Both the position numbers and the translations under genes were made by a program. A model generated the notes under the pieces. That model was not told the origin of the DNA, did not search any database, and saw only the letters and a program-made list of their open reading frames with translations. Below, one piece after another: positions 2,147 through 61,324 of a DNA stretch of 64,000 nt. The stretch's first letter is position 1. Each line of letters opens with the position of its first letter. The stretch covers positions 62,001 to 126,000 of the IMG/VR virus record IMGVR_UViG_3300037010_001227. One strand, 5' to 3'.

Positions 2147-2236
2147 AGGCGGAAAACAAGAGGATCGAACTCTCATGCCCTTTCAGGTATCTTGTTTAGT
2201 AAACAAGTGCAACAAACCAGTATTTGCCTGTTTTCC
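2147..2236 (-). tRNA. tRNA-Ser(ACT), class II
   Basis: GGAAAAC/GTTTTCC acceptor, G73, CTTGT-TTACTAA-ACAAG anticodon arm, long V-arm, TTCGATC loop; ends CCT. Confidence 0.85.
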
Positions 2237-2241
2237 ATAAA

Positions 2242-2422
2242 TGACGGGCCGTTTAATCCCGTCTCTCCTTGTCGGTCATGACTCCGACTCATCTTGTAAT
2301 TTCAAGAATGCTTAATCTATGTAAGAACGTATAACACAAATCAATTATCTAGTTAGCTAGCATTTTCAATAATTGAAAACGAACTTGATTACAGCGGTTC
2401 AAACAGGAAGATCGAGGAAACC
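2242..2422 (-). ncRNA. candidate structured ncRNA, rod-like, about 180 nt
   Basis: Nested long-range complementarity (2384-2393 with 2295-2306; 2359-2364 with 2307-2312; partial end-to-end pairing) plus local hairpins; no ORF. Confidence 0.35.
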
Positions 2423-2432
2423 TATAATTTAA

Positions 2433-3029
2433 TTATAGTAGTTTCAGCCCTTTTATACGAAAAATGTCACCAAAGTTGTTCATCAGAGCTAAAGCAGTTA
2501 CTCGGTTATCTAAATCAGGTTCACTCCATTCTGTATAAAAATCAAACCTACAACTATCATAGCGTTGAAGAATCTGTTTAAGACTCTGAGAACCTTCCGG
2601 TGTTAATAATATAATCGTACCATTAGTCCAAGGCGCTAATGGATGCTCTTTCTGAAATTGAGCAACAGCATGAGCTGACTGAACTGCTTTCTGTGACTCA
2701 GATAAAGTCTCATCACAAATAATATAAAGCTTCTTTGCACCTGGATTGTTAAAATACTCTTTCCAAGTATCAATACGCTCACGTAATTTATCACTCAAAT
2801 CACGTAATCTATGTTCATATGCCTTACTGGCATTTTTTGATATAACTTCAATTGGACCTTTGTGAGTCCTATACTTGCTACGTAATTCTGACATAGCTAT
2901 ATGAAGTGCTCTATACTGAACCGTATTAGTTCCAGCGTAGGTTTTAAGTAACAGTTTAGCCTTTTTCCAAGCTTCTTTTTGTTCAGCAGTGAAATTAGGA
3001 CGAGTTTTAATAGTAGTTTCGATAGCCAT
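2433..3029 (-). CDS. PTH2-like peptidyl-tRNA hydrolase domain protein with N-terminal extension
   Basis: C-terminal QKAVQSAHAVAQF...WSEPDLDNRVTALAL pattern of phage PTH2-like proteins; SD AAGGAG before the ATG at 3029. Confidence 0.7.
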   Translation of the reverse strand: MAIETTIKTRPNFTAEQKEAWKKAKLLLKTYAGTNTVQYRALHIAMSELRSKYRTHKGPIEVISKNASKAYEHRLRDLSDKLRERIDTWKEYFNNPGAKKLYIICDETLSESQKAVQSAHAVAQFQKEHPLAPWTNGTIILLTPEGSQSLKQILQRYDSCRFDFYTEWSEPDLDNRVTALALMNNFGDIFRIKGLKLL

Positions 3030-3036
3030 TTGATGG

Positions 3037-3143
3037 TCTCCTTGAAAAATTGGCACTTTATAAAGGTGTAACTCTTCACAAGATCAAGGCGATCTACTTA
3101 CAACCTAAAGATGATTAAAGCTCATAAACATGATGTTACTCCT
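3037..3143 (-). promoter_or_regulatory. leader peptide MFMSFNHL* (3105-3131) with putative translational attenuator of the PTH2-like gene
   Basis: SD AGGAGT 6 nt before the uORF ATG; AGATC/GATCT hairpin competes with anti-SD TCGCCTTGA pairing to TCAAGGAGA (8 of 9 bp). Confidence 0.5.
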
Positions 3144-3155
3144 AATATATAATTC

Positions 3156-3229
3156 TGGTGTTTCTGACAGGAATTGAACCCGTATAAACTATTTTAGAGA
3201 TAGCTGCTCTACCGTTGAGCTACAGAAAC
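3156..3229 (-). tRNA. amber suppressor tRNA (CTA anticodon)
   Basis: GTTTCTG/CAGAAAC acceptor, A73, CCA; GCTAT-CTCTAAA-ATAGT anticodon arm; canonical D- and T-arms. Confidence 0.9.
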
Positions 3230-3319
3230 ATTTTATAGATGATAAAACCAGGGAGGTTAGCCTCGCCAATACCTGCGGTTTTATATTCCGCTATTCTATA
3301 TAGAAAGAGCTATATTAAT

Positions 3320-3410
3320 TGGCGGCAGGTGTCCGATTCGAACGGACGAAACGCTTTCACGTTTGGATGTTTTCAAGACATCTGGGTTGTAACCACTTCC
3401 CTAACCTGCC
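3320..3410 (-). tRNA. tRNA-Ser(TGA)
   Basis: GATGT-CTTGAAA-ACATC, long V-arm, G73, CCA. Confidence 0.95.
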
Positions 3411-3510
3411 TATAGTTCTTCTTTACCGTAATGTTGTAACACATGACAATTAGAACAAATCAATTGTAAGTTATCCAAATCATTTGTGCCAATGTTACAG
3501 GTTTCTACTA
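3411..3510 (-). pseudogene. C-terminal fragment of an HNH endonuclease
   Basis: Translates as GTNDLDNLQLICSNCHVLQHYGK; no intact 5' part. Confidence 0.6.
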
Positions 3511-3541
3511 TATAATAAACAACTAAGTTTTTAGTTGATTA

Positions 3542-3784
3542 TCATACTTCCTCAACTCTAAATTGATTTTTAGCTGGAACCCAACCACCGCGTTTATGCC
3601 TATATTCAATAAAATTATCAATCCAATCATGTGCCTCTAAAGAGGTTTCAAATTCCCAGTACTCCATAGTTGGAGGAATTGGATCAAATATTGGCATTCC
3701 CAACAAATCATATTGCCAACCTAAGACTTTAGGTAGATAACATTCGCCAAATGGTTGTCCTAAGTTAGTCCAAATTCTATACAT
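3542..3784 (-). CDS. hypothetical protein
   Basis: ORF track, co-oriented with the tRNA array. Confidence 0.65.
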   Translation of the reverse strand: MYRIWTNLGQPFGECYLPKVLGWQYDLLGMPIFDPIPPTMEYWEFETSLEAHDWIDNFIEYRHKRGGWVPAKNQFRVEEV

Positions 3785-3797
3785 ATAATCCTCAAAA

Positions 3798-3871
3798 TGG
3801 TTGGGAAGCTAGGAGTTGAACCTAGGCTAAGACTTTCAAAGAGTCCGGTGCTACCGTAACACTTCTTCCCA
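3798..3871 (-). tRNA. tRNA-Gln(TTG)
   Basis: T1-A72 acceptor TGGGAAG/CTTCCCA, GGACT-CTTTGAA-AGTCT, CCA. Confidence 0.9.
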
Positions 3872-3877
3872 ATAATA

Positions 3878-4171
3878 TTAATCTACTTGCTCATAAGTAG
3901 CTGTAAAGATATCTGGTTTACAAGGATAAATCTCACCAAAAGCACCTTTAATAATCCAATCATTCCAAGAAACCAAAAGATTACCTTCCAGCGTTCCAAT
4001 AGAAAGAGTTCCATCCCTAGTCCCAGCTTCTGTAGGAAATAAGGAACCTTCTGTTCCTCGTTCTAATTGCCAAGCTTGATTTAACCAAGAAGGCCAATCC
4101 GTATTACTTGCTCTACGTTCTTTAGTCATTTGAAATGCTTCAATGACCACTGGTTTCTTTCGAAATTTCAT
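3878..4171 (-). CDS. conserved phage protein (KFRKKPVVIEA...WIIKG..GE.YPCKPDIF family)
   Basis: Recognisable widespread phage family motif; SD GAGGA. Confidence 0.8.
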   Translation of the reverse strand: MKFRKKPVVIEAFQMTKERRASNTDWPSWLNQAWQLERGTEGSLFPTEAGTRDGTLSIGTLEGNLLVSWNDWIIKGAFGEIYPCKPDIFTATYEQVD

Positions 4172-4208
4172 ATCGTCCTCTACATTATATCGGACTGAAT
4201 AAAAATTT

Positions 4209-4721
4209 CTAAACCTCTTTCAACATCTGTGGGCCTTTTACGATTCCACGATCTTGGAAGAATGAAATATACTTTTTAGTTTCTTCTGGGGCATTTTTAA
4301 GACCTTTTCTGATAACATTTCCACGACCCCAATTATATGCTGCCAAAGCTTCAGAATAGTTTCCAAATGTATCAAGTAAAGATTTTAATGTTTTAGCTGC
4401 CCACTCTGCTGCTTCTAGTGGATTAAATGGATCTCCATTAAATCCACTAATATGTGCTGGCATAATCTGAAATAAACCCTTCGCCCCTCGCTGGGATTTA
4501 GCATGAGGATTTCCCTTTGACTCAATTTCAATCATATGCTTGAGAATACCTGGAGCTAATCCATATGCCTTCTCTAATGAATTCAATCCTAATTTAGCAT
4601 ACCAAACATCAGGTGATTCCTGCTGTTTGTGCGTAATTGCAGGAGGCATTGTTGTAGTTTGGTGAATCTGTTCTTGAATAATATATTGTGATTTAATAAA
4701 TTCTTCTAGTTTTAATGACAT
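4209..4721 (-). CDS. soluble lytic transglycosylase (SLT domain)
   Basis: IESKGNPHAKSQRGAKGLFQIMP and ALAAYNWG motifs. Confidence 0.9.
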   Translation of the reverse strand: MSLKLEEFIKSQYIIQEQIHQTTTMPPAITHKQQESPDVWYAKLGLNSLEKAYGLAPGILKHMIEIESKGNPHAKSQRGAKGLFQIMPAHISGFNGDPFNPLEAAEWAAKTLKSLLDTFGNYSEALAAYNWGRGNVIRKGLKNAPEETKKYISFFQDRGIVKGPQMLKEV

Positions 4722-4743
4722 ATAAATCTCTACTATTTAGTTC

Positions 4744-4830
4744 TGATGCGAGAATTGGGAGTGGAACCCACACATCACAAGGATATCACTTTCTAAGAAT
4801 GAAACGTCGAGCTAGGTCTGCCATTCTCGC
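4744..4830 (-). tRNA. tRNA-Leu(TAG) with aberrant T-loop
   Basis: GCGAGAA/TTCTCGC, A73, TCATT-CTTAGAA-AGTGA, V-arm; T-loop TTCCACT; no CCA. Confidence 0.75.
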
Positions 4831-4832
4831 AT

Positions 4833-4917
4833 GGGTGCTGATTACAGGAATCGAACCTGGTTACTTTCACGCCAGATTTACAGTCTGGTACCAAGTCCAG
4901 TAGAGAGCAGAATCAGC
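4833..4917 (-). tRNA. tRNA-Tyr(GTA)
   Basis: GCTGATT/AATCAGC, A73, CCAGA-CTGTAAA-TCTGG, V-arm, TTCGATT loop; weak D-stem. Confidence 0.85.
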
Positions 4918-4920
4918 AAA

Positions 4921-4948
4921 TAAAAAGGCCCTAAACTAATAGGGCCTA
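4921..4948 (-). terminator. intrinsic terminator immediately 5' of tRNA-Tyr
   Basis: AGGCCCT/AGGGCCT stem followed by a T run on the minus strand. Confidence 0.65.
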
Positions 4949-4968
4949 GTATAGGATATTTAGTTCGC

Positions 4969-5130
4969 TTAACTGATAGGAGTCTTGTCAATATAACCAG
5001 AAGTTTGTTGCCAAGAAATTTCCCGATTTAACTCTACTTGAGTAGGAGTCAGTGGAGTAAAAATATCAGCTGGAACTTCATATTGAAGTTTAAGGGGATC
5101 TTCTTTATCTAGTAGATAGGTTTGTGACAT
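4969..5130 (-). CDS. 53-aa hypothetical protein (MSQTYLLDKEDPLK...)
   Basis: Hand translation; SD GAGGT; below the ORF-track size cutoff. Confidence 0.6.
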   Translation of the reverse strand: MSQTYLLDKEDPLKLQYEVPADIFTPLTPTQVELNREISWQQTSGYIDKTPIS

Positions 5131-5202
5131 GGTTAGAATACCTCTATAATTTAGTTAAACTTAATTTACTTAATTATTCAAGTAAAATAAGATTTTATTT
5201 TT

Positions 5203-5280
5203 TGGTGGATCTTGTCGGTAACGATCCGACCTGTATTCTCCTTGCAAAAGAGACAACCACCCCGTGCAGTTCCAAGACCC
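5203..5280 (-). tRNA. tRNA-Ala(TGC)
   Basis: G3.U70 pair, TCTCT-TTTGCAA-GGAGA, A73, CCA; T-loop ATCGTTA. Confidence 0.9.
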
Positions 5281-5284
5281 AAAA

Positions 5285-5880
5285 TTATTTGTGTTTTATG
5301 TATCTACTACTGTCAGTAAGAAAATGTATCTCTTCATGACAGGTAGGCACAAAATTTGAAGATTTTCAATACTATTGTTTGTTCTGTCTTTATCTATACG
5401 ATAAACAATTAACAATTCCGGTAACTTATCATATCCGCAATTATTACAGTTATTTGTATTATTTCTTTTTCTATTTCTCTGTAACTATAATCTCCACTTT
5501 TAAAATCTATTCTAACTAATAAATTTCGTTCAGTTTGTTTAGCTAAATCACAACATTTATGAGAACAAAAATGTAGTCCAGATTTTTTAGAATCAAATAA
5601 TTTACTAATATAATAAGATTTTCCACATAATGAACAAACACAATTATGTGGCTTGTCTTATTTTGTAAACAGCTTATTATATAACAATATGTGCAAGATT
5701 TACAACAAAACTTAGCTCTCACTCTATTAAGTTATTTATTTTCAGCTTCAATATATCTTGCAATATAAACATTTTACAATAGTTTTTGATATATTGGCAG
5801 ATATCCTTTGTATTTATTTACAAAGAAGACAGACCATCCACTAAATAAAAGTTTACAGTCAAATACACAAACTTCTACAA
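5285..5880 (-). pseudogene. decayed HNH endonuclease with N-terminal Cys-rich repeats
   Basis: Fragments CSLCGKSY..FCSHKC, CNNCGYDK..LIVYRIDKDRTNNSIENLQILC(fs)PTCHEEIH, broken by stops and frameshifts. Confidence 0.75.
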
Positions 5881-5907
5881 AAGTCTACCAAGATTAACCT
5901 GGTTAAT

Positions 5908-5982
5908 TGGTCGGAGTAGGAGAGATCGAATCTCCGGCTTCCTGTATCCAAAACAGGCTGTCTACCACTGACTTACACTCCG
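5908..5982 (-). tRNA. tRNA-Pro(TGG)
   Basis: C1-G72, CCTGT-TTTGGAT-ACAGG, A73, CCA. Confidence 0.95.
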
Positions 5983-6043
5983 TATTTTAACATATTATCA
6001 CATATGTTGGGGAAGAACCTAACGCTTCAAATGTGAAGGTTAC

Positions 6044-6119
6044 AGGTTGCCCAAAGTAGGATTGAACTACTAACCTCACGATTATCGGTCGTGCGCTCTA
6101 CCAGTTGAGCTATTAGGCA
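6044..6119 (-). tRNA. tRNA-Ile(GAT) with C33
   Basis: CACGA-CCGATAA-TCGTG; TGCCTAA/TTGGGCA acceptor. Confidence 0.85.
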
Positions 6120-6122
6120 ATA

Positions 6123-6197
6123 TGGTGGGCTAGATTAGTATCGTCTAACCTCTCGGGATTTTCAGTCCACGCGCTAATACATCTCAGCTACTAACCC
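6123..6197 (-). tRNA. tRNA-Phe(GAA) with degenerate T-loop
   Basis: GGGTTAG/CTAGCCC, A73, CCA, CTGAAAA loop; weak anticodon stem; T-loop ACGATA. Confidence 0.75.
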
Positions 6198-6227
6198 ATA
6201 AAATAAACCATTATTTGATTTTCAAAC

Positions 6228-6406
6228 AACAAAAAACCCGCTTTTTTTTGGCGGGTTCTTGTGAAAGGAGCAAAGATGAAGCTTTATGAACAAGAACCCG
6301 CTCTAGTATGAATGGAGAAAATTGCTGGGCTAAATTGGGCATAAAAACTACGACCAACGTTGTCGTTAGTTGCAAGTAGTGATGTCTGTCCAACTTGAAA
6401 GTTCAT
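6228..6406 (-). promoter_or_regulatory. leader-peptide transcription attenuator upstream of tRNA-Phe/Ile/Pro
   Basis: 40-aa uORF 6284-6406; 12-bp antiterminator (6290-6301 with 6251-6262) mutually exclusive with terminator (6251-6257 with 6235-6241 plus U run). Confidence 0.65.
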
Positions 6407-6465
6407 ACAATTAATTCCTATTTGTATACTGGTGGATAGGAAGAAAACTTAAGATATTTATTTTT

Positions 6466-6540
6466 TGGTGCGCCCGGAGGATCTCGAAACCTCAACCCTT
6501 TCGTTAAAAGCGAAATGCTCTTCCTTTGAGCTACGGGCAC
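6466..6540 (-). tRNA. tRNA-Lys(TTT)
   Basis: TTTCG-CTTTTAA-CGAAA, A73, CCA; T53/T61 mismatch at the T-stem closing pair. Confidence 0.85.
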
Positions 6541-6544
6541 AGAA

Positions 6545-6770
6545 TAATGACAGAGATAACCTTGAAGTATTATGTCCAAACTGCCATTCATTAATAGATA
6601 CTTGAAGAGGTAAAACCAAGGAAATTCAAAACAAGGAAAATACCATACCATACCAGATGATACTTTAATTGAGGCACTAAAAGCAACTGAAACAGTAGGA
6701 CAAGTAGGTATTGTAGTAAGATTATCTCCCAAAGGTAATAACTATGTTAGAGCAAAGAGATACATGTAAA
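6545..6770 (+). pseudogene. HNH endonuclease fragments, antisense to the tRNA array
   Basis: DNLEVLCPNCHSLIDT*RGK, then (frameshifted) TLIEALKATETVGQVGIVVRLSPKGNNY. Confidence 0.6.
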
Positions 6771-6781
6771 CGTTACTAATT

Positions 6782-6864
6782 TGGCTGAGGATATTGGAAT
6801 CGAACCAATCAGGTCAAAGACGAAAGCTTAACAGGCTTTTGTACCACCACTGTACTAATCCTCA
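6782..6864 (-). tRNA. tRNA-Asn(GTT) with extended variable arm
   Basis: TGAGGAT/ATCCTCA, G73, CCA; AAAGC-CTGTTAA-GCTTT; 13-nt V region with GTC-TTT-GAC hairpin. Confidence 0.9.
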
Positions 6865-30824: not shown

Positions 30825-30896
30825 GTCTATTTTCCTATATGTAGTGCGGGTTTCGGACGATATACCTTTACGACGTTTTTTATGAGGCATCAAGGA

Positions 30897-33800
30897 ATGA
30901 CATTTCAAACACTACAGCAGCAATACTTAGAAGCTAAAGGCAAAACATTAGAGACTGCATCGGAGGCTATGATAAGCGATGCAACTGCGTATGCTTCTTG
31001 TTATGATTGGTATATTACTAAGCAGTTAGTATCAGATAGTACCGCAGATTTGGCCTCTAAAGTATGGGTTAATAAGTATGCTCTGCATGATAAGAATGGT
31101 ATTTGCAGAGAGCGAACACTAGAAGATACTTGGAAGCGTATTGCTAAAACTCTGGCCGAAGTAGAAGTAGCCAACAGTGGTGATTCCGCTAATGAGTTTT
31201 CTAAATGGAATGATATTTTCTTAGACGCTCTTCAGGATTTTAAGTATGCTCCGGGTGGTAGTGGACTATACAGTATTGGAAACCCGTATACCTGTTCCAG
31301 CGTTTCTAACTGCTTCGTAATGAATCCTCCACAGGATAATCTTGAGTCTATCTTTGATGTTGCTAAAAGTATGGCAAGAGTTTACGCTAACCGTGGGGGC
31401 TGTGGTGTAGATATTTCTAATCTACGCCCCTGTAATGCTCCTACAAATAACGCTGCAAAGTCTTCTACTGGCGCTGCTAGTTTTATGGACTTCTATAGTT
31501 ATGTTACAGGAAAGATTGGTCAAGAAGGCAGACGTGGTGCCCTTCTGATGTCAATGCGTATTGACCATCCTGATATTTTTAAGTTCATTAAAATGAAACG
31601 TGACGAAGACAAGCAATGGTTTATTACTGAACTTGAAGAGGCTGGAATTGATCTTAAAGATTATAAATATTCAGCTATTGCTGATAGACTCAAGTCTTGC
31701 TCACAGTCAAACGTATCTGTAAAAATTACAGATAAGTTCATTTCTGCATTAGAAAAAGATGAGATGTTTGAACTTTGGTTTGAATATGATAATGGCTACC
31801 CAAGATACTCTGAATTTGTGAGAGCAAAAGATATTTGGGATGCTCTTATTGAAGGTGCTTGGGCTTCTGCTGAACCAGGAATGTTTAACTGGGATCATAT
31901 CCTACGAGAGTCTACTTCTGGAAAATACGATGGAGTAATATATAAAGGTAAGAAAGTTCAGGGTAAAGAAATTACAAGTAATCCTTGTCAACCGGGGTTT
32001 GCTACTGTTCTTACTCCAAATGGGATCAGAACCTTCGATGACATCACTGTTGGCTCTACAATTTGGTCTGGTAACCAATGGACAAGAGTTGTAAATAAAG
32101 TAGCAACTGGGATTAAAAAAGTTTTTCGTTATACCACTAATGCTGGTGAGTTCATCGGCACAGAAAACCATCGTGTTGTAAGTAATGGTACTAAAGTTGA
32201 AGTTGGAAAAACTGATAGTATTGATATTTGTATTGGTAACCCTTCTTTTCTACGGTTGGATATTGAAGGGTGTAGAATGGCTGAAAATAGTCAAACTATT
32301 ATGGATGGTTGGGTAATTGGAGATGGTTCTGTTCATACTGCAAGTAACAATTTAGTTTTTATCTGTGTTGGAGAAAATGATTACGACATTCATACAGCAT
32401 TACCAGAGTATCTGATAAAAGCTCGCCCTGACATTAAAGAGACCGCTTGGGAAGTTAACACTACTATTACAGCAGATGAGCTTTCTCTTACTTATAGTAG
32501 AAGAGTTCCAAGTAGATTTAAATTTGGTAGTTTTGATACTGTTGCAGATTTTCTTTGCGGATTATACTCGGCTAACGGATCTATTACTGAAAATAGAGTA
32601 ACGTTAAAGTCAGCTTCTGTTGGATTAATTAAAGATGTTCAAGAGATGCTTTCTTCGTTAGGTATTTCTTCTTACGTTACTATAAATAAGGAAAAAGAAG
32701 TAGAATTTTCTGAAGGTTCTTATACCTACAAAGAACCTTATGTTTTAAACATCGGTGACATAGTTAATAAAACTAAATTTTGTAAGCTTATAGGATTTAA
32801 GCAAGACTATAAACTTGATAACTTAATCAACGTTATTAAGGATGAGTCTCATGGTGGAAAAACTACATATGATATCACCACTATTACTGAAGTAGGAGAC
32901 TTAGAAGTATTTGATATTACCGTAGATGCAGATGAGCATACCTATTGGACTGGCGGACTTTTAGTGTCAAACTGTGGCGAAATTGTAATGCCTCCAGATA
33001 GTTGCAACCTTGGTCAGATGTATCTTCCTGCTTTCGTAGAATATCCTTATACCCCAGAGGCATATTTTAACCGGGAGAAATACGAGAAGTACGCTGCTAT
33101 TGCAGTTAGAATGCAAGACAATATTAAACAACTTGATATTGATTCTGGTCTACTGCTTCCTGAACATCAGTTATCTGCTGAAGCTTTTAGACGTTTAGGA
33201 CTGGGTAATACTGGTTATGGTGATATGTTTGCAATGCTAGGAATCAAATATGGTTCTGATGAATCTATTGCTTGTGCTGAAAACATTGCAGAAATTTATA
33301 AAGAGGTTGTCTATAATGCTTCTGTAGATCTAGCAATTGATAAAGGTTCTTTCCCTGTTTTTGATTGGGATCGTCATAAGCAAAGTCCGTTCATTCAGAG
33401 ACTGAAACCAGAAACTCAGCAGCGTATTGCATCTTTTGGTATTAGAAATATTGCACTACTAACACAAGCTCCTAATGGAACTGGTTCTATTCTTTGCAGA
33501 AACACTACTTCTGGTCTTGAACCAATGTTCTTTGCTGAATCAAATAGAAATGTTAAGAATCCTGACGGTTCAATTACTCGTTATACTGTTTACCATCAGG
33601 GAATTGAAGATTGCAAACGTGCTGGTGGCGATCCTTCTGTTTATGTTGCTGCTCATGATGTTTCTTATGAGAAGAAGATTGAACTTCAGGCAGCAATGCA
33701 GAAGCACATTGATCACTCAATCAGCGTTACAGCTAATCTTCCAGCAGAAATCAGTAAAGAAGAAATTGGAAGTCTTTATCTAAAAGCTTTTAAACTTGGT

Positions 33801-34445
33801 TGTAAAGGTTTCACAGTGTATCGTGAAGGTTCAAGAGGAAGTGTTTTATCTGCTTTAGATGAAAAGAAAGTTGTAAAGCGGTTACTCGATAAACCACTTG
33901 AACGTCCTAAGACAACTGAAGTTGATATTCATAAGGTAAAATATAAGGATAAGCCTTGGTCAGTTCTTGTTGGAAGTCTTGATGGGATTCCAATTGAAGT
34001 ATTTGCTGGTATTGAAGAAGACACTCCGCTCCCAAATAAATACCATAAGGCCGAACTGACTAAGAAGTCTAAAGGTCATTATTCCCTAACTGTTTATCTT
34101 TCTGCTGATTCACAAGAAGATGTTATTAAGATAAACAATATTGGCGCAAGATTCCCATCACCGGAAGGTTTAGTTCTTACACGGTTCATTTCATTATTAC
34201 TTCGTAATCGTGTTCCAATTTCTGATATTGTTGAGCAGCTTCAGAAATCAGCAAGTTCTATGTTTGATTACCCAGCTGTTCTAGCAAGAGTTCTTAAGCA
34301 GTATGCTTCGGATGAAGAGTTAGCTGCTAAAATTAAAGGAACACCATGTCCTGACTGTGGTAAAGAACTTAAAATAAAACGAGAGAGTGGTTGCTCTGTA
34401 GTATATTGTGAAAATTGTAATTACGTAGATAGTAAGTGTGGTTAA
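30897..34445 (+). CDS. nrdJ: class II (B12-dependent) ribonucleotide reductase with intein
   Basis: SNCF, NPC(intein)GE, APNGTGS, TTSGLEP, QKHIDHSISVT, YREGSR; C-terminal Zn ribbon; start at 30897 after AAGGA. Confidence 0.95.
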   Translation: MTFQTLQQQYLEAKGKTLETASEAMISDATAYASCYDWYITKQLVSDSTADLASKVWVNKYALHDKNGICRERTLEDTWKRIAKTLAEVEVANSGDSANEFSKWNDIFLDALQDFKYAPGGSGLYSIGNPYTCSSVSNCFVMNPPQDNLESIFDVAKSMARVYANRGGCGVDISNLRPCNAPTNNAAKSSTGAASFMDFYSYVTGKIGQEGRRGALLMSMRIDHPDIFKFIKMKRDEDKQWFITELEEAGIDLKDYKYSAIADRLKSCSQSNVSVKITDKFISALEKDEMFELWFEYDNGYPRYSEFVRAKDIWDALIEGAWASAEPGMFNWDHILRESTSGKYDGVIYKGKKVQGKEITSNPCQPGFATVLTPNGIRTFDDITVGSTIWSGNQWTRVVNKVATGIKKVFRYTTNAGEFIGTENHRVVSNGTKVEVGKTDSIDICIGNPSFLRLDIEGCRMAENSQTIMDGWVIGDGSVHTASNNLVFICVGENDYDIHTALPEYLIKARPDIKETAWEVNTTITADELSLTYSRRVPSRFKFGSFDTVADFLCGLYSANGSITENRVTLKSASVGLIKDVQEMLSSLGISSYVTINKEKEVEFSEGSYTYKEPYVLNIGDIVNKTKFCKLIGFKQDYKLDNLINVIKDESHGGKTTYDITTITEVGDLEVFDITVDADEHTYWTGGLLVSNCGEIVMPPDSCNLGQMYLPAFVEYPYTPEAYFNREKYEKYAAIAVRMQDNIKQLDIDSGLLLPEHQLSAEAFRRLGLGNTGYGDMFAMLGIKYGSDESIACAENIAEIYKEVVYNASVDLAIDKGSFPVFDWDRHKQSPFIQRLKPETQQRIASFGIRNIALLTQAPNGTGSILCRNTTSGLEPMFFAESNRNVKNPDGSITRYTVYHQGIEDCKRAGGDPSVYVAAHDVSYEKKIELQAAMQKHIDHSISVTANLPAEISKEEIGSLYLKAFKLGCKGFTVYREGSRGSVLSALDEKKVVKRLLDKPLERPKTTEVDIHKVKYKDKPWSVLVGSLDGIPIEVFAGIEEDTPLPNKYHKAELTKKSKGHYSLTVYLSADSQEDVIKINNIGARFPSPEGLVLTRFISLLLRNRVPISDIVEQLQKSASSMFDYPAVLARVLKQYASDEELAAKIKGTPCPDCGKELKIKRESGCSVVYCENCNYVDSKCG
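31986..32972 (+). mobile_element. 329-aa intein with LAGLIDADG homing endonuclease, inserted at the RNR catalytic Cys
   Basis: Begins CQPGFATVLT after NP; GTENHRV block B; GWVIGDG and GLYSANG LAGLIDADG-like motifs; ends LLVSN before CGE. Confidence 0.93.
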
Positions 34446-56343: not shown

Positions 56344-56650
56344 CGTGGTATGAAAAATAATAGATATTCTGTGTATTTATTAGGATTAAATGATTCCTTA
56401 CCCTTACCTTAATAGATGGATATTTTCTATTAGTTAAATAAACTAATTTTTCACAATACAAATCTAAATCTTGTATAGTTTTCATCAATATTTGAGGAAA
56501 TTCTGTACCAGCAAATTTTGTACCAGCAAATTTTGTGAGCTTGTTTTGAATTTGAGCTTTAAAAAAATTGCATTTTTGTTCAGAAATACCCTCTTCCAAT
56601 ATAAAGAAGTTAGATTTAATGAACGAATTGATAGGTAGATTCGTAGGCAT
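56327..56650 (-). CDS. hypothetical protein
   Basis: ORF track; contains a short TKFAG tandem duplication; start moved to the second Met. Confidence 0.55.
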   Translation of the reverse strand: MPTNLPINSFIKSNFFILEEGISEQKCNFFKAQIQNKLTKFAGTKFAGTEFPQILMKTIQDLDLYCEKLVYLTNRKYPSIKVRVRNHLILINTQNIYYFSYHVETTK

Positions 56651-57499
56651 GAATTTAATTCCTGGCAATAGATGTTCATAATATTTCTAAAGGTTATATA
56701 ACTATAATCAGGGAATTATCTACATAAAACAGACCATAGGTGATTTTATATACTTCGGTAGTAGTTCTACAGATAATTTGTTTTGTATATGTTTACTATT
56801 GCATCTACTAATAGACCAGTAATGTTTAGTACTCAATTAGACGCTGACTACTATCTTGATATTGATAAAATACTGATTCGTAATAGACTGTACAATGATG
56901 ATACAGATACTATACAGATACTATAATAACACCAATATGTAGAGGAGAGTTTGTAATAGTATTGTGTTAATCCAAAGAAGAAGTTAAGAAAAAGCTGGAG
57001 TAGTAAATCAATTAATAAGTTTAACGAGTAATAAGATAAATCCAACCAAAAAGGAATAATACAGGATTACATTAATAAGTCTACCGGCATATACCTACAT
57101 AATCTATTTATAGTATAGTACATCAGTAACACCACCTGGTAATATATAATATAACTATTATAGACCTATCAAAAGTACGATATCTTGAGATTAAATATTA
57201 GTACTACACATGTCTCATAAGTAGAGAAATGAATTCAAATAACACTAAATTTATTAGTATAATTTCTTTAAAATAGGATTTGATTTTATGTGACATTCTA
57301 GTACAATACGATTTAACATCTACAGGATTAGATATCTAATCCTATTAGAACTGTTGATGATTTATATAGATACGAAACTCTTGTAGAAATTTTTAAACCT
57401 TTGGTAGAGATAACCTATAGCGCGCCAAGTTTTGAAGGGTTTATTAAAATAAGAATGTAAGGTTAAAAAAATTATCTACTGTTATTTCAGTACTTCCAA

Positions 57500-57737
57500 T
57501 AAATTGAATTTTTTTTGAATTTTTTTTTTGAATTTTTTTTTGAATTTTTTTTTTATTGATTTTTTTTTAATTTTTTTATTACCATCTGGAAACCTTTTAG
57601 TTTCCTTTGGAAAATTTTTAGTTTTCTCTGGAAAATTTTTTAAAATTTTTTATTTACCCTCTGGAAACCTTTTAGTTTTCTCTGGAAAATTTTTTAAAAT
57701 TTTTTATTTACCCTCTGGAAAATTTTAAAAAATTTTT
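57500..57737. repeat. T-tract / AT-rich repeat zone (ttgaatttttt x4; ~50-bp ctctggaaa unit x2 plus partial copies)
   Basis: Direct reading of the sequence. Confidence 0.85.
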
Positions 57738-57794
57738 TGTTGAAAAACGAGTTCATGTGGTGCGAGGACAATTTGCCCAGTCATGAATCTTGCA

Positions 57795-58013
57795 TGGTAT
57801 CCCCATTGCATAACTACGGCAGTTTTTACCTGGAATTTTCTGCCGATTTCATCAAAATTCGTGCCAATTTGAGCGAATGCAACCTTTATGCCAAAATCCG
57901 CTGGAACGTTTTGATTACTTCAATAATCCTTGCAATGGCTCCAGGGTATCAAGTGAAGCAAGCAAGCGCGGCACGGCGAGCCTAGAGCATGGCGTGCTGC
58001 AAAGATCATGCCA
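57795..58013. promoter_or_regulatory. cluster of four sigma54-type -24/-12 motifs
   Basis: TGGTAT-CCCCA-TTGCA (+57795), TGGCAC-GAATT-TTGAT (-57866), TGGCAT-AAAGG-TTGCA (-57893), TGGCAT-GATCT-TTGCA (-58013). Confidence 0.6.
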
Positions 58014-58155
58014 AGGTGGCGTGATTACTTCAGTAATCCTTGTAATGGTTCCAAGGTATCAAGTGAAGCAAGCAAACGGAACACAAAGGAAAGCTGATTA
58101 CTTCAGTAATCCTTGTAATGGTTCCAAGGTATCAAGTGAAGCAAGCAAACGGAAC
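57912..58155. repeat. three ~57-61-bp direct repeats (tgattacttcagtaatccttgtaatggttccaaggtatcaagtgaagcaagcaa)
   Basis: Copies start at 57912, 58022 and 58095; internal GATTAC/GTAATC palindrome. Confidence 0.9.
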
Positions 58156-58234
58156 AAATATCACGTTCCAAAGTAACCAAGCTAACATGGGATAAGCTGG
58201 TTACTTAAACCATCCCAAACGAAAGGGGTCTATC

Positions 58235-58822
58235 ATGGCTCTTATCAAGACTGTCTCTCTCTGCGGGCTGACCTGCAACGTCGAAACCAACGACGACAAA
58301 GAGAAGGAAAGTGTTTCCTTCGTTTTCCCCGAACTGACTTTCGAGAAGGGGGTCAGGGGCTCGAAGGAAAAGGAAATCAAGACTGTTTCCATCGGCAAGC
58401 GCAGTTTCAATGCGGTGCTTGATCTTTTCGAGCTGGTGAAGGACCCCGCCAGCAGGGCCGCTATCTCCGATGGCAAGCTGAAGGAATTGAGCCCGGTTCT
58501 TTACAAGGCCGTGATCAATTCGGGGAATGATCCCGAAGAGTTTTACCTCTCTGCTGGCAGTATCATTGCAGAGATGGAATCTGAGGAAGAGAATCTTTCT
58601 GCAAGCAATCCCAACAACATTGCAGCCCGTGCCATTGCTTCCGTGTTTACCATGGAAGATACGGCGGAATCCTGCAATCCGCAGGATCTTCTCCAGAAGT
58701 TTATGGAGAAGCTGGACATGGCAGAAGTGAAGAAACTTCTGTCCAAGTTTGAGGAACTGGGACGGTTCGATGATGGGAGTCTCAGGACCCGCAAGCAGAA
58801 GGCAACCTCGAAGGCCGCGTAA
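58235..58822 (+). CDS. hypothetical protein with GC-rich codon usage
   Basis: SD AAGGGG; visibly higher GC3 than neighbouring genes. Confidence 0.75.
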   Translation: MALIKTVSLCGLTCNVETNDDKEKESVSFVFPELTFEKGVRGSKEKEIKTVSIGKRSFNAVLDLFELVKDPASRAAISDGKLKELSPVLYKAVINSGNDPEEFYLSAGSIIAEMESEEENLSASNPNNIAARAIASVFTMEDTAESCNPQDLLQKFMEKLDMAEVKKLLSKFEELGRFDDGSLRTRKQKATSKAA

Positions 58823-59003
58823 CACCTGGAGTAATAGCCGGGACTCAGTAATGGGTTCCGGCTATTGCTTTGTCTATTTTTAGGATGTTTGTTATGTAAC
58901 ATACATCCTGGTTTTAATTCATTAGATACATTCGCATTCTTAAAATACATCCAGGTATCTATACAGTATTAGATACACCGAGGTATTTTAACAATGTGGT
59001 TTT

Positions 59004-59242
59004 ATTAACCCCGGAGAAAATGTCATTAATTAATCCGGATTTTATTAAATATAGTAATATATACACTTACGATTTTTCATCGTAAACCAATTTAAAATAA
59101 TTTTCATTAACCCCGGAGAAAATGTCATTAATTAATCCGGATTTTATTAAATATAGTAATATATACACTTACGATTTTTCATCGTAAAACAATCCGGAAT
59201 AATTTTAATACATCCCGGAAAAATGTCATTAATTAATCCGAA
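59004..59242. repeat. two identical 83-bp direct repeats plus a partial third copy
   Basis: 59004-59086 = 59106-59188; internal ccgga/tccgg and ttacgat/atcgtaa inverted repeats. Confidence 0.9.
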
Positions 59243-59351
59243 TATCTATTAATAGCCCGATGATATATGCAGCTGAAGTTATGGCTGATATGTTATCGGG
59301 CTATTTTTGTATTGGATTTAATACTTACAATCAGAAATACAATTAAGATTT

Positions 59352-59414
59352 TGGTATGGAAATTGGATGTAATAAATAAATAAATACAATTAAGATTTTG
59401 GTATGGAAATTGCT
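59352..59414 (+). promoter_or_regulatory. tandem sigma54-type motifs upstream of the small-gene cassette array
   Basis: TGGTAT-GGAAA-TTGGA (59352) and TGGTAT-GGAAA-TTGCT (59399) inside a duplicated segment. Confidence 0.55.
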
Positions 59415-59569
59415 CGTGTTCATCCGATAATAAACACTCTACAATTTACTAAACTTGCTCATGAGTTTAGTAACTGTGATTATCGCCCATAAGCCAGAAA
59501 TTGCTATTAGTGATTCAGTTAGGGCACTGAATAAATCACTAACAATATACATACCTATGGAGGTATCAT

Positions 59570-60265
59570 ATGTCACTTGAACAACCCATCGTAGAAAGAG
59601 TAAAGAAACTCTTGGCATTATCTAAATCTTCCAATCCTGCTGAAGCTGAATTGGCAATGATGAAAGCCAATGAACTGATTCAGAAGTGGAATATTAACAT
59701 TATCGAACACCTGGATGAAAAAACTAACAAATGGACATTCCAGGTTCATGATAACGATGGGAAGGATAGTATATTTTATGGTAATAGATTGCAGGAATGG
59801 GAACTATTTCTTATGATGAAATTAGCTACCTACTGTGATGGTAAAATTGTGCAGTACGGTTATTCAGATACAACGCGGTATTGTTTCGTTGGTCTGGAAA
59901 CTGATGCTCAATTGTGCAAGATGCTATTCTGGGATATTAATAATCGTATTCGTAGTATCTTTAACAAAATGAAGAAGGCAATGCAGCTAAAAGATCGAAA
60001 TGCTTTTAGTCTTGGTGTTGTTCTTTCTCTTTGTAATCGAATGATTGAAGCAAAAAAAGTAATGCTTCAAACCCAGATTACTGAACGTGGTCTTATTACT
60101 ATTGACCATAAGAATAATGAATTTGCTGAATACTATTCTAATCTATCTAAGGGTTTTGTTAATTCCAATCATCGATTCAATCAAGAACGAGATTGGGATT
60201 CGTTTAAGGTTGGTACGAAGGTTGGTAATGATATGGAAATGTCCGTTGTTAATCCTACTGTTTAG
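59570..60265 (+). CDS. DUF2786-domain protein
   Basis: ERVKKLLALSKSSNPAEAELAMMKANELIQKWNI signature; ...VGLETDA... Confidence 0.8.
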   Translation: MSLEQPIVERVKKLLALSKSSNPAEAELAMMKANELIQKWNINIIEHLDEKTNKWTFQVHDNDGKDSIFYGNRLQEWELFLMMKLATYCDGKIVQYGYSDTTRYCFVGLETDAQLCKMLFWDINNRIRSIFNKMKKAMQLKDRNAFSLGVVLSLCNRMIEAKKVMLQTQITERGLITIDHKNNEFAEYYSNLSKGFVNSNHRFNQERDWDSFKVGTKVGNDMEMSVVNPTV

Positions 60266-60346
60266 TATTCTAGTCAGCACATTGTATTAGAATGTGCTGA
60301 ATAGTTTACTAATCCCGGTAAACTATATATCCTATGGAGGTATATC

Positions 60347-60424
60347 GTGAGTATTGAGATTTTGTTGGACGGTGAATGGGTTCTGTTGGTTTCGGAATCT
60401 GAACAAGAGTCACACCAGGGTTAA
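60347..60424 (+). CDS. 25-aa peptide (VSIEILLDGEWVLLVSESEQESHQG)
   Basis: GTG start 6 nt after GGAGG. Confidence 0.5.
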   Translation: MSIEILLDGEWVLLVSESEQESHQG

Positions 60425-60523
60425 ATCTGAAGCTAGTATTCTGGCTAACACATTCAGTTTAAATACTTGATGTGTTAGATAGTTTACTAATCACGGTAAA
60501 CTACACGTCCTATGGAGGACACG

Positions 60524-60853
60524 ATGTCAGCAAACCAGCAGGATATGTTCTACAGTATTCTCAGCGGTAGTGGATTTCTTACCACTACCCAAGCTGAAGA
60601 ATTGGCTGAAAAATGTGCCAATTCTGTTCAGCATTTCACGGATGACCAGGACCCGTTTCCTGTTCTTTACGAGGATAGGAATGTGGTTATCTATACCAAT
60701 GGGTCCAACGAAATCTTCATTAAGGAGAAGAACACACTCTCCGAAATGAGGATGAATTTCGACAACGGGATTCAGTTCACGGCCCAGGGTCACTACGTGG
60801 AACCATACTCCACCAATGGTTTAATTGGTTGGAGGGTGAAGAAGCGGAAGTAG
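60524..60853 (+). CDS. hypothetical protein
   Basis: Start moved downstream of the GGAGG SD; GC3-rich codons. Confidence 0.75.
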   Translation: MSANQQDMFYSILSGSGFLTTTQAEELAEKCANSVQHFTDDQDPFPVLYEDRNVVIYTNGSNEIFIKEKNTLSEMRMNFDNGIQFTAQGHYVEPYSTNGLIGWRVKKRK

Positions 60854-60928
60854 TAGTTCAGTCAACACATCATCTCAACTATTAAGATGATGTGTTGAAT
60901 CAACTACTATCCTATGGAGGATACCATA

Positions 60929-61120
60929 ATGTTTCTCTTAATTACCACTGTCTTTACCAAGAAACGAGTTATTAAACTTGTTGATAAAGTTGGTGAAAGC
61001 GGTAAAGAAACAAGTAATACATTGAAAGCATTTGGCTTTAAAGGGCCGGATGTGCATTCACTATTTGAAGGATATCCAGTAGAAGTAAGTAATAAGACAT
61101 TTTCATTACAGAAACAGTAG
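60929..61120 (+). CDS. hypothetical protein
   Basis: Start moved downstream of the GGAGG SD. Confidence 0.7.
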   Translation: MFLLITTVFTKKRVIKLVDKVGESGKETSNTLKAFGFKGPDVHSLFEGYPVEVSNKTFSLQKQ

Positions 61121-61192
61121 TAGCTCAGTCAACACATCCTCTTAATATAGATGATGTGTTGAATCAACTACTATCCTATGGAGGATATAACA

Positions 61193-61324
61193 ATGAGAAT
61201 ACAATTCATATGTGGTTGTGGAGTTCGCAACTACAATCTTGGAGATTGGCTCTGCCATTTTAAACAAAGTGGATTTTTGCGTGGAATGAGACACCTGTTA
61301 AAAACAAAGATTCAATTCAAGTAA
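61193..61324 (+). CDS. 43-aa Cys/His-containing peptide (MRIQFICGCG...)
   Basis: Hand translation; GGAGG SD. Confidence 0.65.
   Translation: MRIQFICGCGVRNYNLGDWLCHFKQSGFLRGMRHLLKTKIQFK

What the first reader, a model, noticed from the sequence alone, without database searches (positions are those of the whole stretch)
57795..59414. Six sigma54-type -24/-12 motifs clustered in the non-coding region
Four full TGGYAT-N5-TTGCW matches (+57795, -57893, -58013, +59399) and two near matches (-57866, +59352) fall within 1.6 kb, in both orientations. The last one points into the small-gene cassette array. Established: sigma54 holoenzyme binds such sites as a stable closed complex and needs an AAA+ enhancer-binding protein. 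Inference: either sigma54-dependent early transcription, rarely described for phages, with the adjacent palindromic repeats as enhancer sites, or a decoy array titrating host sigma54.
Basis: partly seen in the sequence, partly recalled or inferred. Interest (0 to 1): 0.72.

Follow-up and report, generated by a model that had tools for sequence, protein, structure and literature searches.

The report
Conserved sigma54-type sites in a phage leader
A 213-kb uncultured phage carries a real, conserved cluster of DNA motifs that look exactly like binding sites for the bacterial sigma-54 RNA polymerase, placed around one GC-rich orphan gene; nothing like it turned up in the phage literature I searched, but binding has not been tested.

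Summary
TGGYAT-N5-TTGCW occurs four times in the window (57795+, 57893-, 58013-, 59399+). These are the only four matches in the whole 213-kb phage genome. Both near matches are also there, plus a seventh site at 58555+.

The cluster beats dinucleotide shuffles of the local sequence, on each strand taken separately.

It is also a conserved property of the locus. Relatives whose ORF195 protein is only 30-80% identical carry the same motif in the same leader. One relative (L132) has four tandem copies, one of them the perfect consensus TGGCACG-N4-TTGCT.

The one site kept in every lineage with a sequenced long leader is 57893- (M2). It varies at the spacer and hardly at all at the sigma54-critical bases. 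It matches the published Clostridiales consensus TTGGCAT-N5-TTGCT.

The sites sit in a self-contained GC-rich unit: AT-rich tract, conserved 5' box, about 480-nt leader, covarying pseudoknot before the ribosome-binding site, orphan 195-aa gene, terminator.

The phage encodes no rpoN and no enhancer-binding protein. The host is unknown and no RNA data were available.

Best reading: these are host sigma54-holoenzyme binding sites, and the conserved core points antisense into the start of the leader. This is not shown. The enhancer-palindrome and decoy-array ideas are not supported as stated.

The parts
57480..57740 (.). AT/T-rich tandem repeats at 17-28% GC: TTGAATTTTTTT x6, then a 54-nt unit x2.3 carrying CTCTGGAAA. 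An AT-rich tract of this kind precedes the unit in every relative.
57752..57764 (+). Conserved 5' box TTCATGTGGTGCG (TTCATG[GT]G[GA]TGCG in L001, L132 and L135). It occurs once in the genome and marks the start of the GC-rich unit.
57795..57810 (+). M1, sigma54-like site TGGTATCCCCATTGCA. It is TGGCCT...TTGCA in L001/L002/L004 and absent in L132/L135. It is also self-complementary (GCATGG/CCATTGC). Predicted start about 57821.
57851..57866 (-). M2b, near match TGGCACGAATTTTGAT, 27 nt downstream of M2 on the minus strand. It is identical in L001. Its counterpart in L132 is the perfect consensus TGGCACGGCCCTTGCT.
57878..57893 (-). M2, sigma54-like site TTGGCATAAAGGTTGCA. It is the only site conserved in all four lineages with long leaders. 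Predicted start about 57867, reading leftward.
57912..58156 (+). Three 62-nt direct repeats (57912-57973, 58022-58083, 58095-58156) with a GATTAC-N4-GTAATC dyad and an invariant GGTATCAAGTGAA core. No consensus RNA structure was found for them.
57998..58013 (-). M3, sigma54-like site TTGGCATGATCTTTGCA, specific to this lineage. L001 instead has a plus-strand TGGCACGATCCATGCA nearby.
58171..58217 (+). H-type RNA pseudoknot in the 5' UTR. S1 pairs 58171-58179 with 58198-58206. The loop segment TGGGAT (58188-58193) pairs with ATCCCA (58212-58217), which ends 17 nt before the ATG. It covaries in 7 lineages.
58235..58822 (+). ORF195, an orphan 195-aa protein with an N-terminal four-stranded sheet, a helical remainder, and a conserved C-terminal GRFDxGxIRxRK motif. 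It has no Pfam or PHROG family. Its family numbers 11 proteins in 1.8 billion representatives.
58555..58570 (+). Extra sigma54-like site TGGCAGTATCATTGCA inside ORF195. It is not conserved in L001.
58827..58882 (+). Intrinsic terminator of the ORF195 unit: a 20-pair hairpin followed by a T run. It is conserved in L001/L002/L004.
59000..59252 (.). 102-nt tandem repeat x2.5 with CCGGA-N18-TCCGG dyads. It is absent in L001.
59251..59312 (+). Second hairpin plus T run (terminator-like), conserved in L001/L002/L004.
59352..59367 (+). Near match TGGTATGGAAATTGGA, in the first copy of a 31-nt direct repeat (59335-59365).
59399..59414 (+). M4, sigma54-like site TTTTGGTATGGAAATTGCT, in the second copy of the 31-nt repeat. 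It is exact in L001/L002/L004 and absent in L132/L135. Predicted start about 59425.
59420..59446 (+). Box TCATCCGAT..ACACTCTACAATTT immediately after M4. Unlike M4, it is kept in L001, L132 and L135, so it may be the conserved promoter element of the array.
59570..60265 (+). First gene of the rightward array of small genes with strong GGAGG ribosome-binding sites (DUF2786/DUF7168, phrog_421).

Best explanation
The motifs are binding sites in double-stranded DNA for the host's sigma54 (RpoN/SigL) RNA polymerase holoenzyme. They are built into the regulatory region of a self-contained, GC-rich phage gene unit.

That unit runs: AT-rich tract, 5' box, about 480-nt leader, pseudoknot, ORF195, terminator.

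The evolutionary core is a tandem pair, M2 and M2b. It lies on the strand opposite ORF195, about 75-105 nt downstream of the 5' box (measured from the predicted antisense start sites), and points back at the box and at the AT-rich tract. The other copies (M1, M3, 58555+, M4 and its degenerate twin) are lineage-specific additions in either orientation.

The likely working is as follows. Host sigma54 holoenzyme sits on these sites as a closed complex. When a host enhancer-binding protein fires it, it transcribes antisense, convergent with the ORF195 mRNA. This ties ORF195 expression to the host's sigma54 state. In this lineage M4, which overlaps the conserved array promoter box, would do the same for the early gene array.

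ORF195 translation is separately gated by the pseudoknot directly in front of its Shine-Dalgarno sequence.

**Shown:** motif presence, enrichment, conservation pattern, both orientations, the pseudoknot, and the absence of rpoN and enhancer-binding-protein genes in the phage.

**Inferred:** sigma54 binding, antisense transcription, and any regulatory effect.
For: 1. The four exact sites are the only ones in 213 kb. The three best-scoring sites genome-wide are all in the island.
2. Enrichment survives local dinucleotide shuffles in the window, L001 and L132, and on each strand separately.
3. Relatives with 30-80% protein identity keep the motif in the same leader. L132 has four tandem sites including the perfect TGGCACG-N4-TTGCT. 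L135 has one. L001 has four.
4. Across M2 orthologues the spacer varies and the critical bases do not: 3 of 54 against 15 of 42 differences. This is the pattern reported for functional sigma54 sites in E. coli (PMC4591121).
5. The motif stays the same while ORF195 diverges to 24-35% identity. That fits a universally conserved host factor better than a co-evolving phage protein.
6. M2, M3 and the L132/L135 sites match the published Clostridiales consensus TTGGCATNNNNNTTGCT (PMC6615313). Other features hint at a Bacillota host: strong GGAGG ribosome-binding sites, and nearest cultured relatives by the UvsX-like protein that are all phages of Bacillota.
7. Sites occur in both orientations, and one lies beyond two terminators. 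This argues for a DNA-level rather than an RNA-level function.
8. The phage's own genes appear to use another promoter class, with a sigma28-like -10 (CCGATAT), which fits its FliA/WhiG-like sigma factor. The sigma54-like sites are therefore a separate, local class.
Against: - There are no binding or transcript data.
- The host is unknown, so the presence of rpoN is unverified.
- The phage has no enhancer-binding-protein domain (PF00158, PF14532) and no sigma54 domain. No conserved upstream activator site was found.
- The conserved sites are antisense to the only adjacent gene, and no conserved gene or terminator lies downstream of them.
- In L001 and L135 the left-hand neighbours are on the plus strand.
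- In E. coli, intragenic sigma54 sites had no measurable roadblock effect (PMC4591121).
- M1 is also a hairpin and is complementary to M2, so part of the pattern could come from RNA or DNA secondary structure.
- My site score is a home-made weighting of the textbook consensus, not a trained matrix.
Confidence: 0.45

Rival explanations
1. The sites bind some other DNA-binding protein, phage-encoded (possibly ORF195 itself) or host. That protein would recognise two similar half-sites, T[GT]GCA, one helical turn apart, as operators, iterons or centromere-like repeats do. The match to sigma54 would be a coincidence of sequence.
For: The cluster always lies next to ORF195, as autoregulatory operators and iterons lie next to their gene. 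Sites vary in number, spacing and orientation between lineages, as homotypic binding-site clusters do. TGGCA and TTGCA are near-repeats with 11-bp phasing (direct reading). The N-terminal four-strand-plus-helix domain of ORF195 gives weak, non-significant matches to PC4/Pur-alpha nucleic-acid binders.
Against: The motif is unchanged while ORF195 diverges to 24-35% identity. The match extends to sigma54-specific detail: TGGCACG, TTGCT, the leading T, and one perfect consensus site. ORF195 has no recognisable DNA-binding fold or family. The protein-DNA complex job was not folded, so it gives no evidence either way.
Confidence: 0.2
2. The minus-strand sites are really a plus-strand RNA motif (GCAA-N5-RUGCCA) within the structured 5' UTR. 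It could be a repeated binding site for ORF195 in translational autoregulation, or one strand of RNA helices. The plus-strand copies would be their pairing partners or chance.
For: The 3' part of the leader is certainly a plus-strand RNA structure. The pseudoknot covaries in 7 lineages, with 130 paired bases against 49 +/- 15 in shuffles, and a G-U pair in L004 fits only the plus strand. All sites in L132 and L135 have one orientation. M1 and M2 are mutually complementary, and M1 folds on itself. The leader folds better than shuffles (z = -3.3).
Against: Plus-orientation sites are independently enriched (3 against 0.12 expected, 1 of 5000). M4 lies beyond two terminators. L132 has four same-strand copies with no partner. 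RNAalifold finds no covariation in this part of the leader and none for the 62-nt repeats. The minus strand folds almost as well (z = -2.5). A GCA/UGC stem of 3 pairs is too weak to be a structural element.
Confidence: 0.12
3. The sites bind sigma54 holoenzyme but are never fired. As the phage DNA replicates, they would titrate host sigma54 (or RNA polymerase) away from host promoters.
For: There are multiple consensus-grade sites in both orientations with turnover between lineages. There is no phage enhancer-binding protein. Sigma54 closed complexes are stable without an activator, and most E. coli sites are transcriptionally inactive (PMC4591121).
Against: L135 has one site only. The conserved part is a precisely placed pair, not a count of sites. 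In L132 two sites are 26 bp apart, too close for two holoenzymes at once (established footprint size, own knowledge). Four to seven sites per genome make a small sponge unless copy number is very high.
Confidence: 0.1
4. The arrangement is a promoter plus an unwinding element, that is, a T4-type replication origin. Transcripts started at M2/M2b would run leftward into the AT-rich repeats, form a persistent R-loop and prime DNA synthesis.
For: In all four lineages the conserved minus-strand site points at an AT-rich tract 60-140 nt away. The phage has a T4-like replication and recombination set: gp32-like protein, UvsX-like protein, primase, 5'-3' exonuclease and Mre11/Rad50-like proteins. T4 oriF and oriG have this anatomy (own knowledge).
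Against: There is no GC-skew inflection here; cumulative skew turns near 10-16 kb of the window. No replication data exist. The AT-rich tract could equally be an upstream element of the ORF195 promoter. A sigma54 promoter would make origin firing depend on a host activator.
Confidence: 0.06
5. The cluster is chance, or a by-product of GC-rich composition and recent duplication.
For: Three sites lie in a GC-rich island. M4 and its twin are copies within one 31-nt duplication.
Against: Local dinucleotide shuffles reject it. M2 and M3 share only the motif positions. Independent lineages carry the motif.
Confidence: 0.01

Closest known systems
Sigma54 (RpoN/SigL) -24/-12 promoters, especially the low-GC Firmicute form TTGGCATNNNNNTTGCT (PMC6615313)
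   Same: The GG and GC doublets are exactly one helical turn apart. The TGGCA[CT] and TTGC[TA] halves, the leading T and the variable 5-nt spacer all match. One relative has the textbook TGGCACG-N4-TTGCT.
   Different: The sites are in a phage genome with no rpoN or enhancer-binding protein of its own. They are clustered. The conserved copies are antisense to the adjacent gene. No upstream activator site could be identified. Neither binding nor firing has been shown.
Intragenic and antisense sigma54 binding sites of E. coli and Salmonella (PMC4591121, PMC3844500)
   Same: The sites lie away from gene starts, are often inactive, and are conserved only at the critical bases. Some drive mRNAs with 360-760-nt 5' UTRs. 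M1 is 425 nt from the ORF195 start codon.
   Different: The E. coli and Salmonella sites are scattered single sites in host chromosomes. Here there is a tight cluster in a phage regulatory leader, kept across divergent phages.
Phage morons (a self-contained unit of promoter, gene and terminator with a base composition unlike the rest of the phage)
   Same: The ORF195 unit has its own leader and strong terminator. It is 47-53% GC within 25-41% GC flanks in all four lineages. In L135 it sits next to an HNH endonuclease gene.
   Different: The composition difference persists across deep divergence, so it is maintained by selection rather than left over from recent transfer. No bacterial homologue exists.
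T4 gene 32 mRNA translational operator (a 5' pseudoknot ahead of the ribosome-binding site)
   Same: There is an H-type pseudoknot directly upstream of the Shine-Dalgarno sequence of a small phage protein, and its position is conserved while its sequence changes.
   Different: ORF195 is not gp32; a gp32-like gene lies elsewhere, at 8583-9428(-). Autoregulation is untested.
T4 oriF/oriG (a promoter plus a downstream DNA-unwinding element)
   Same: A promoter-like site points into an AT-rich repeat tract in a phage with T4-like replication genes.
   Different: The T4 origins use MotA-dependent sigma70 promoters. No origin evidence exists here.

Membership tests
sigma54-dependent promoter | GG at -24 and GC at -12 with fixed spacing, inside TGGCAC-N5-TTGCW | tested here: met
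   There are four exact TGGYAT-N5-TTGCW sites and three further GG/GC or near sites. A perfect consensus site occurs in relative L132.
sigma54-dependent promoter | Purifying selection confined to the critical bases of orthologous sites | tested here: met
   Across M2 orthologues, 3 of 54 critical positions differ against 15 of 42 other positions. This rests on only four lineages.
sigma54-dependent promoter | The organism that transcribes it encodes rpoN | not testable with these tools
   The phage has no Sigma54_DBD or Sigma54_CBD domain. The host is unknown. Hints point to Bacillota, many of which have SigL.
sigma54-dependent promoter | An AAA+ enhancer-binding protein and its upstream activator site about 80-150 bp upstream | tested here: inconclusive
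   The phage has no PF00158 or PF14532 domain. The candidate dyads (GATTAC-N4-GTAATC and CCGGA-N18-TCCGG) are not conserved in L001. Host enhancer-binding proteins are unknown.
sigma54-dependent promoter | Transcription start about 12 nt downstream of the GC | not testable with these tools
   No RNA run was listed.
sigma54-dependent promoter | A gene or RNA in the right orientation downstream | tested here: inconclusive
   M1 and M4 face ORF195 and the gene array. The conserved M2/M2b, and M3, face away from ORF195, and no conserved ORF or terminator lies downstream of them.
sigma-factor decoy or titration array | Many sites whose number, rather than position, is conserved | tested here: not met
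   Sites per leader are 1 in L135, 3 in L001, 3-4 in the window (M1, M2, M3, plus the near match M2b) and 4 in L132. What is conserved is one positioned pair.
structured RNA leader or translational operator | Base pairs kept through compensatory change on the mRNA strand | tested here: met
   This holds for the 3' 70 nt only. An H-type pseudoknot occurs in 9 sequences from 7 lineages, and its 3' arm ends 17-23 nt before the ATG. It does not hold for the part of the leader that carries the motifs.
known RNA families (Rfam 15) | A match at or near the gathering score | tested here: not met
   Only tRNAs reach the gathering score in the window. Nothing credible appears in 57300-59600 at E <= 1.

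The most novel reading that the evidence does not exclude
A lineage of uncultured jumbo phages has wired the host's sigma54 holoenzyme into its own control region without carrying an enhancer-binding protein. This could work in one of three ways. The sites could act as a sensor that couples an orphan gene, ORF195, and the early gene array to the host's sigma54 and activator state through convergent antisense transcription. They could prime a T4-type origin. Or ORF195 could itself be a new kind of sigma54 partner that is not an AAA+ protein. Any of the three would be a mode of phage-host transcriptional coupling I did not find described in the searched literature.
Probability: 0.15. Interest if true: 0.85.

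Novelty: new variant of a known kind. Interest (0 to 1): 0.62.

Why it matters
Phages are known to take over sigma70-type transcription in many ways. Use of the activator-dependent sigma54 system by a phage is almost undescribed: two literature searches found no report of sigma54 site clusters in phage genomes.

A conserved, consensus-grade sigma54 site pair in a phage control region would mean one of two things. Either phages can read the host's sigma54 and activator state (nutrient, stress or motility signals), or they exploit the unusually stable sigma54 closed complex for another purpose.

Sigma54 recognition is nearly universal, so the claim can be tested in vitro with standard E. coli or B. 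subtilis holoenzyme, even though this phage and its host are uncultured.

The locus also yields two further findings. One is a well-supported new 5' UTR pseudoknot. The other is an orphan protein family that is kept GC-rich inside AT-rich genomes.

Tried and rejected
- **Collection scans.** A 15-mer of the 62-nt repeat against metagenome contigs, a 20-mer of the conserved leader block against viral and genome contigs, and a gapped M2b-M2 pattern against viral contigs all gave only chance hits. This spent the metagenome and genome caps.
- **Searches for more relatives.** The search for related loci with ORF195 or with its family alignment found none in IMG/VR. A second word-index protein search added no members. 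P0002 and P0005 have contigs but no retrievable DNA.
- **Complex prediction.** The ORF195 dimer with the M2b-M2 DNA was not folded by the tool and gives no evidence.
- **ORF195 function.** Pfam, PHROGs, Foldseek against PDB and BFVD, the ESM Atlas and tblastn against cultured phages all gave nothing significant.
- **RNA structure.** RNAalifold found no consensus for the 62-nt repeats. The whole-leader fold has many broken pairs outside the 3' hairpin. Fold z-scores do not tell the strands apart.
- **Upstream ORF reading.** The plus-strand ORF 57773-57985 (70 aa) was rejected as coding. It is 46 aa in L001, shows about 1 synonymous against about 19 non-synonymous differences, and is absent in L132 and L135 (direct reading). 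A 27-aa minus-strand ORF downstream of M2 was rejected likewise.
- **Sigma70 promoter scan.** 11 hits against 11.2 expected, so it is uninformative.
- **TGGTAC-N5-TTGC tandem at 56500-56536(-).** It lies in a repeated peptide of a probable ORF and was treated as incidental.
- **Moorella phage MTATph1, the nearest cultured relative by the UvsX-like protein.** It has one motif match against one for the control pattern, so no cluster.
Full report
**What the window is.** The window is bases 62001-126000 of a single 213,189-bp virus record from IMG/VR. The record is estimated 95% complete and is 34% GC. Near-identical DNA is held by microbial-mat and sediment metagenomes.

The phage carries a T4-like replication and recombination set: a UvsX/RecA-like protein, a gp32-like protein, a 5'-3' exonuclease, a primase domain and Mre11/Rad50-like proteins. 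It also carries a ribonucleotide reductase with a LAGLIDADG insert and 12 tRNA genes, one with a CTA anticodon. It encodes a FliA/WhiG-like sigma factor. It has no RNA polymerase of its own.

Nearly every gene has a strong GGAGG ribosome-binding site. The closest cultured phages by the UvsX-like protein infect Moorella, Staphylococcus and Enterococcus, at 28-31% identity. This is a weak pointer to a Bacillota host.

**The observation.** TGGYAT-N5-TTGCW matches at 57795+, 57893-, 58013- and 59399+, exactly as reported. Window shuffles expect 0.13 matches. These are the only four matches in the whole genome. The near matches at 57866- and 59352+ are also real, and a seventh site sits at 58555+.

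Three of the four exact sites lie in a 1.1-kb GC-rich island, so I re-tested against dinucleotide shuffles of the local sequence. The results were 5 sites against 0.25 expected (0 of 5000 shuffles) for 57740-59420, and 3 against 0.18 for the leader alone. Each strand is enriched separately.

**Anatomy of the region.** Leftward genes end near 56650 and rightward genes start at 58235, so the region is a large divergent control region. From left to right it contains:
- T-rich tandem repeats at 57480-57740;
- a 5' box, TTCATGTGGTGCG, at 57752, which occurs once in the genome;
- a GC-rich leader of about 480 nt holding M1 (+), M2b (-), M2 (-), three 62-nt repeats and M3 (-);
- a hairpin and pseudoknot, then a ribosome-binding site;
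- ORF195 at 58235-58822;
- a 20-pair terminator;
- a 102-nt repeat x2.5;
- a second terminator-like hairpin at 59251-59312;
- a duplicated 31-nt element carrying the near match and M4;
- an array of small genes separated by hairpins.

**Relatives.** ORF195 is an orphan. A word-index search found four homologues. An exhaustive profile search of 1.8 billion representatives found six more, at 24-35% identity. Contigs were retrievable for most of them.

In all four lineages with enough flank, the unit is 47-53% GC inside flanks of 25-41% GC. In each it is preceded by an AT-rich tract and the 5' box.

**The key comparative result.** Scanning the relatives with a weighted sigma54 consensus (GG and GC required) gave the following:
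- L001/L002/L004 have TGGCCTCCCCATTGCA (+), TGGCATGAAACCTGCT (-), TGGCACGATCCATGCA (+) and TGGTATGGAAATTGCA (+).
- L132 has four minus-strand sites within 120 nt, one of them the perfect TGGCACGGCCCTTGCT.
- L135 has one, TGGCATAAAACTTGCT (-).

Local shuffles give 4 against 0.08 expected in L132 (0 of 5000) and 3 against 0.10 in L001 (1 of 5000).

M2 is orthologous in all four lineages, and a second site lies 26-27 nt downstream of it in three of them. Among M2 orthologues the critical positions differ at 3 of 54 pairwise comparisons and the other positions at 15 of 42.

The cluster is therefore a conserved property of this locus, with turnover in the number, position and orientation of sites.

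**Is it sigma54?** The sites fit the general consensus. In the TTGGCAT-N5-TTGC[TA] form they fit the consensus used for Clostridiales (PMC6615313).

The motif does not change while ORF195 diverges to about 25-35% identity. That is expected for a universally conserved host factor and unexpected for a co-evolving phage DNA-binding protein.

Sites occur on both strands, and M4 lies beyond two terminators, so the function is most simply at the level of double-stranded DNA.

The phage's own genes appear to use a different promoter class: CCTTnAGG, 14-15 nt, then tCCGATAT, a sigma28-like -10. It lies just upstream of several genes, including the UvsX-like gene, and it fits the phage's FliA-like sigma factor.

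Against the sigma54 reading:
- The phage has no rpoN and no enhancer-binding-protein domain.
- The host is unknown.
- No conserved upstream activator site was found.
- No transcript data could be obtained.

**What the sites do.** The deep conservation belongs to the M2/M2b pair. It points away from ORF195, back toward the 5' box and the AT-rich tract. Predicted starts are near 57867 and 57840.

The 55 nt just downstream of M2 on that strand are identical between the window and L001, although the ORF differs by about 26% at the nucleotide level. I therefore favour convergent or antisense sigma54-dependent transcription, or stable occupancy, acting on the start of the ORF195 leader.

M4 overlaps the upstream edge of a box that is conserved in all lineages (59420-59446). 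That box may be the real array promoter. Sigma54 binding at M4 could compete with it; repression by overlapping sigma54 sites is reported in the E. coli ChIP-seq paper (PMC4591121).

The decoy-array idea is weakened by L135 having a single site. The enhancer-palindrome idea is weakened because the dyads are not conserved. A T4-type origin (promoter plus unwinding element) remains a low-probability alternative.

**RNA level.** The last 70 nt of the leader form an H-type pseudoknot. The 3' arm of its second helix ends 17-23 nt before the start codon in all nine sequences, which come from seven lineages. The helix sequences are unrelated between lineages: TGGGAT/ATCCCA, TGAGAGTTG/TAACTCTCA, TGAATGGT/ACCATTCA, GTGAGG/CCTCAC and others.

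The paired bases total 130, against 49 +/- 15 in shuffles with a maximum of 87 in 200. A G-U pair in L004 assigns the structure to the mRNA strand. This is good evidence for a translational operator in front of ORF195.

The motif-bearing part of the leader shows no such covariation.

**Verdict.** Assigning the motifs to sigma54 is the best single explanation but is untested, at about 0.45. A further 0.16 goes to two variants that also rest on sigma54-holoenzyme binding at these sites, the decoy array and the T4-type origin.

The finding is a new variant of a known kind, and it can be tested in vitro without culturing the phage.

Noticed in passing
window 58171-58217 (and L001, L004, L131, L133, L135, L137, L139, L141): An H-type pseudoknot lies directly upstream of the ORF195 Shine-Dalgarno sequence. 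It covaries across seven lineages and looks like a translational operator.
   Followed up: yes
window 8527(-), 46707(+), 36312(+), 12444(+), 25849(+), 11320(+), 4193(-), 46234(+); sigma gene at G000:C1:209613-210377: A candidate phage promoter class, CCTTnAGG-N14-15-tCCGATAT (a sigma28-like -10), lies 15-30 nt before several genes. It fits the phage-encoded FliA/WhiG-like sigma factor (131 bits against TIGR02479).
   Followed up: partly
window 3156-3229(-) and 184-6864(-): There is a cluster of ten tRNA genes, one with a CTA anticodon (an amber suppressor, which ARAGORN calls 'Pyl'). This suggests TAG may be read through or recoded in part of the genome.
   Followed up: no
window 30882-34445(+): The ribonucleotide reductase large subunit is interrupted by a LAGLIDADG homing-endonuclease (intein-like) insert at residues 553-606.
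   Followed up: no
window 56500-56536: A 15-nt tandem repeat reads TGGTACAAAATTTGC x2.5 on the minus strand, which is also -24/-12-like. It lies inside a probable small ORF (56485-56679-) that encodes a KFAGT peptide repeat.
   Followed up: partly
window 57480-57740: This is an extremely T-rich stretch (17-28% GC) of tandem repeats with six CTCTGGAAA words. Similar GAAAATTTTTT repeats precede the unit in L001, L132 and L135. It could be an upstream element, bent DNA or an unwinding element.
   Followed up: partly
window 59000-59252: A 102-nt tandem repeat x2.5 lies between two terminators. Each copy has a CCGGA-N18-TCCGG dyad and an ACGAT-N5-ATCGT hairpin. It is absent from L001 and its function is unknown.
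   Followed up: no
window 60266-61193 and onward: The small early genes are separated by near-identical cassettes: a hairpin (CAGCACAT...ATGTGCTG or CAACACATC...GATGTGTTG) followed by a short conserved spacer and CCTATGGAGG. There is no obvious promoter per gene, which suggests one long transcript that is processed or attenuated at the hairpins.
   Followed up: no
L135 139-615; L132 and L135 leaders: In L135 an HNH endonuclease gene sits directly upstream of the ORF195 unit, which may indicate mobility of the unit. The L132 and L135 leaders share TATGTAAGACTA, an AUG-UAA start-stop that the window lacks.
   Followed up: no
window 57812-57866: A 55-nt non-coding stretch is nearly identical (one difference) between the window and L001/L004, although the neighbouring ORF differs by about 26% at the nucleotide level. 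It is the most conserved element of the locus and lies just downstream of M2 on the minus strand.
   Followed up: partly
window 58235-58822 and homologues: The ORF195 family is kept at about 50% GC inside 30-35% GC phages across deep divergence. It ends in a conserved GRFDxGxIRxRK motif, which may be a docking peptide.
   Followed up: partly
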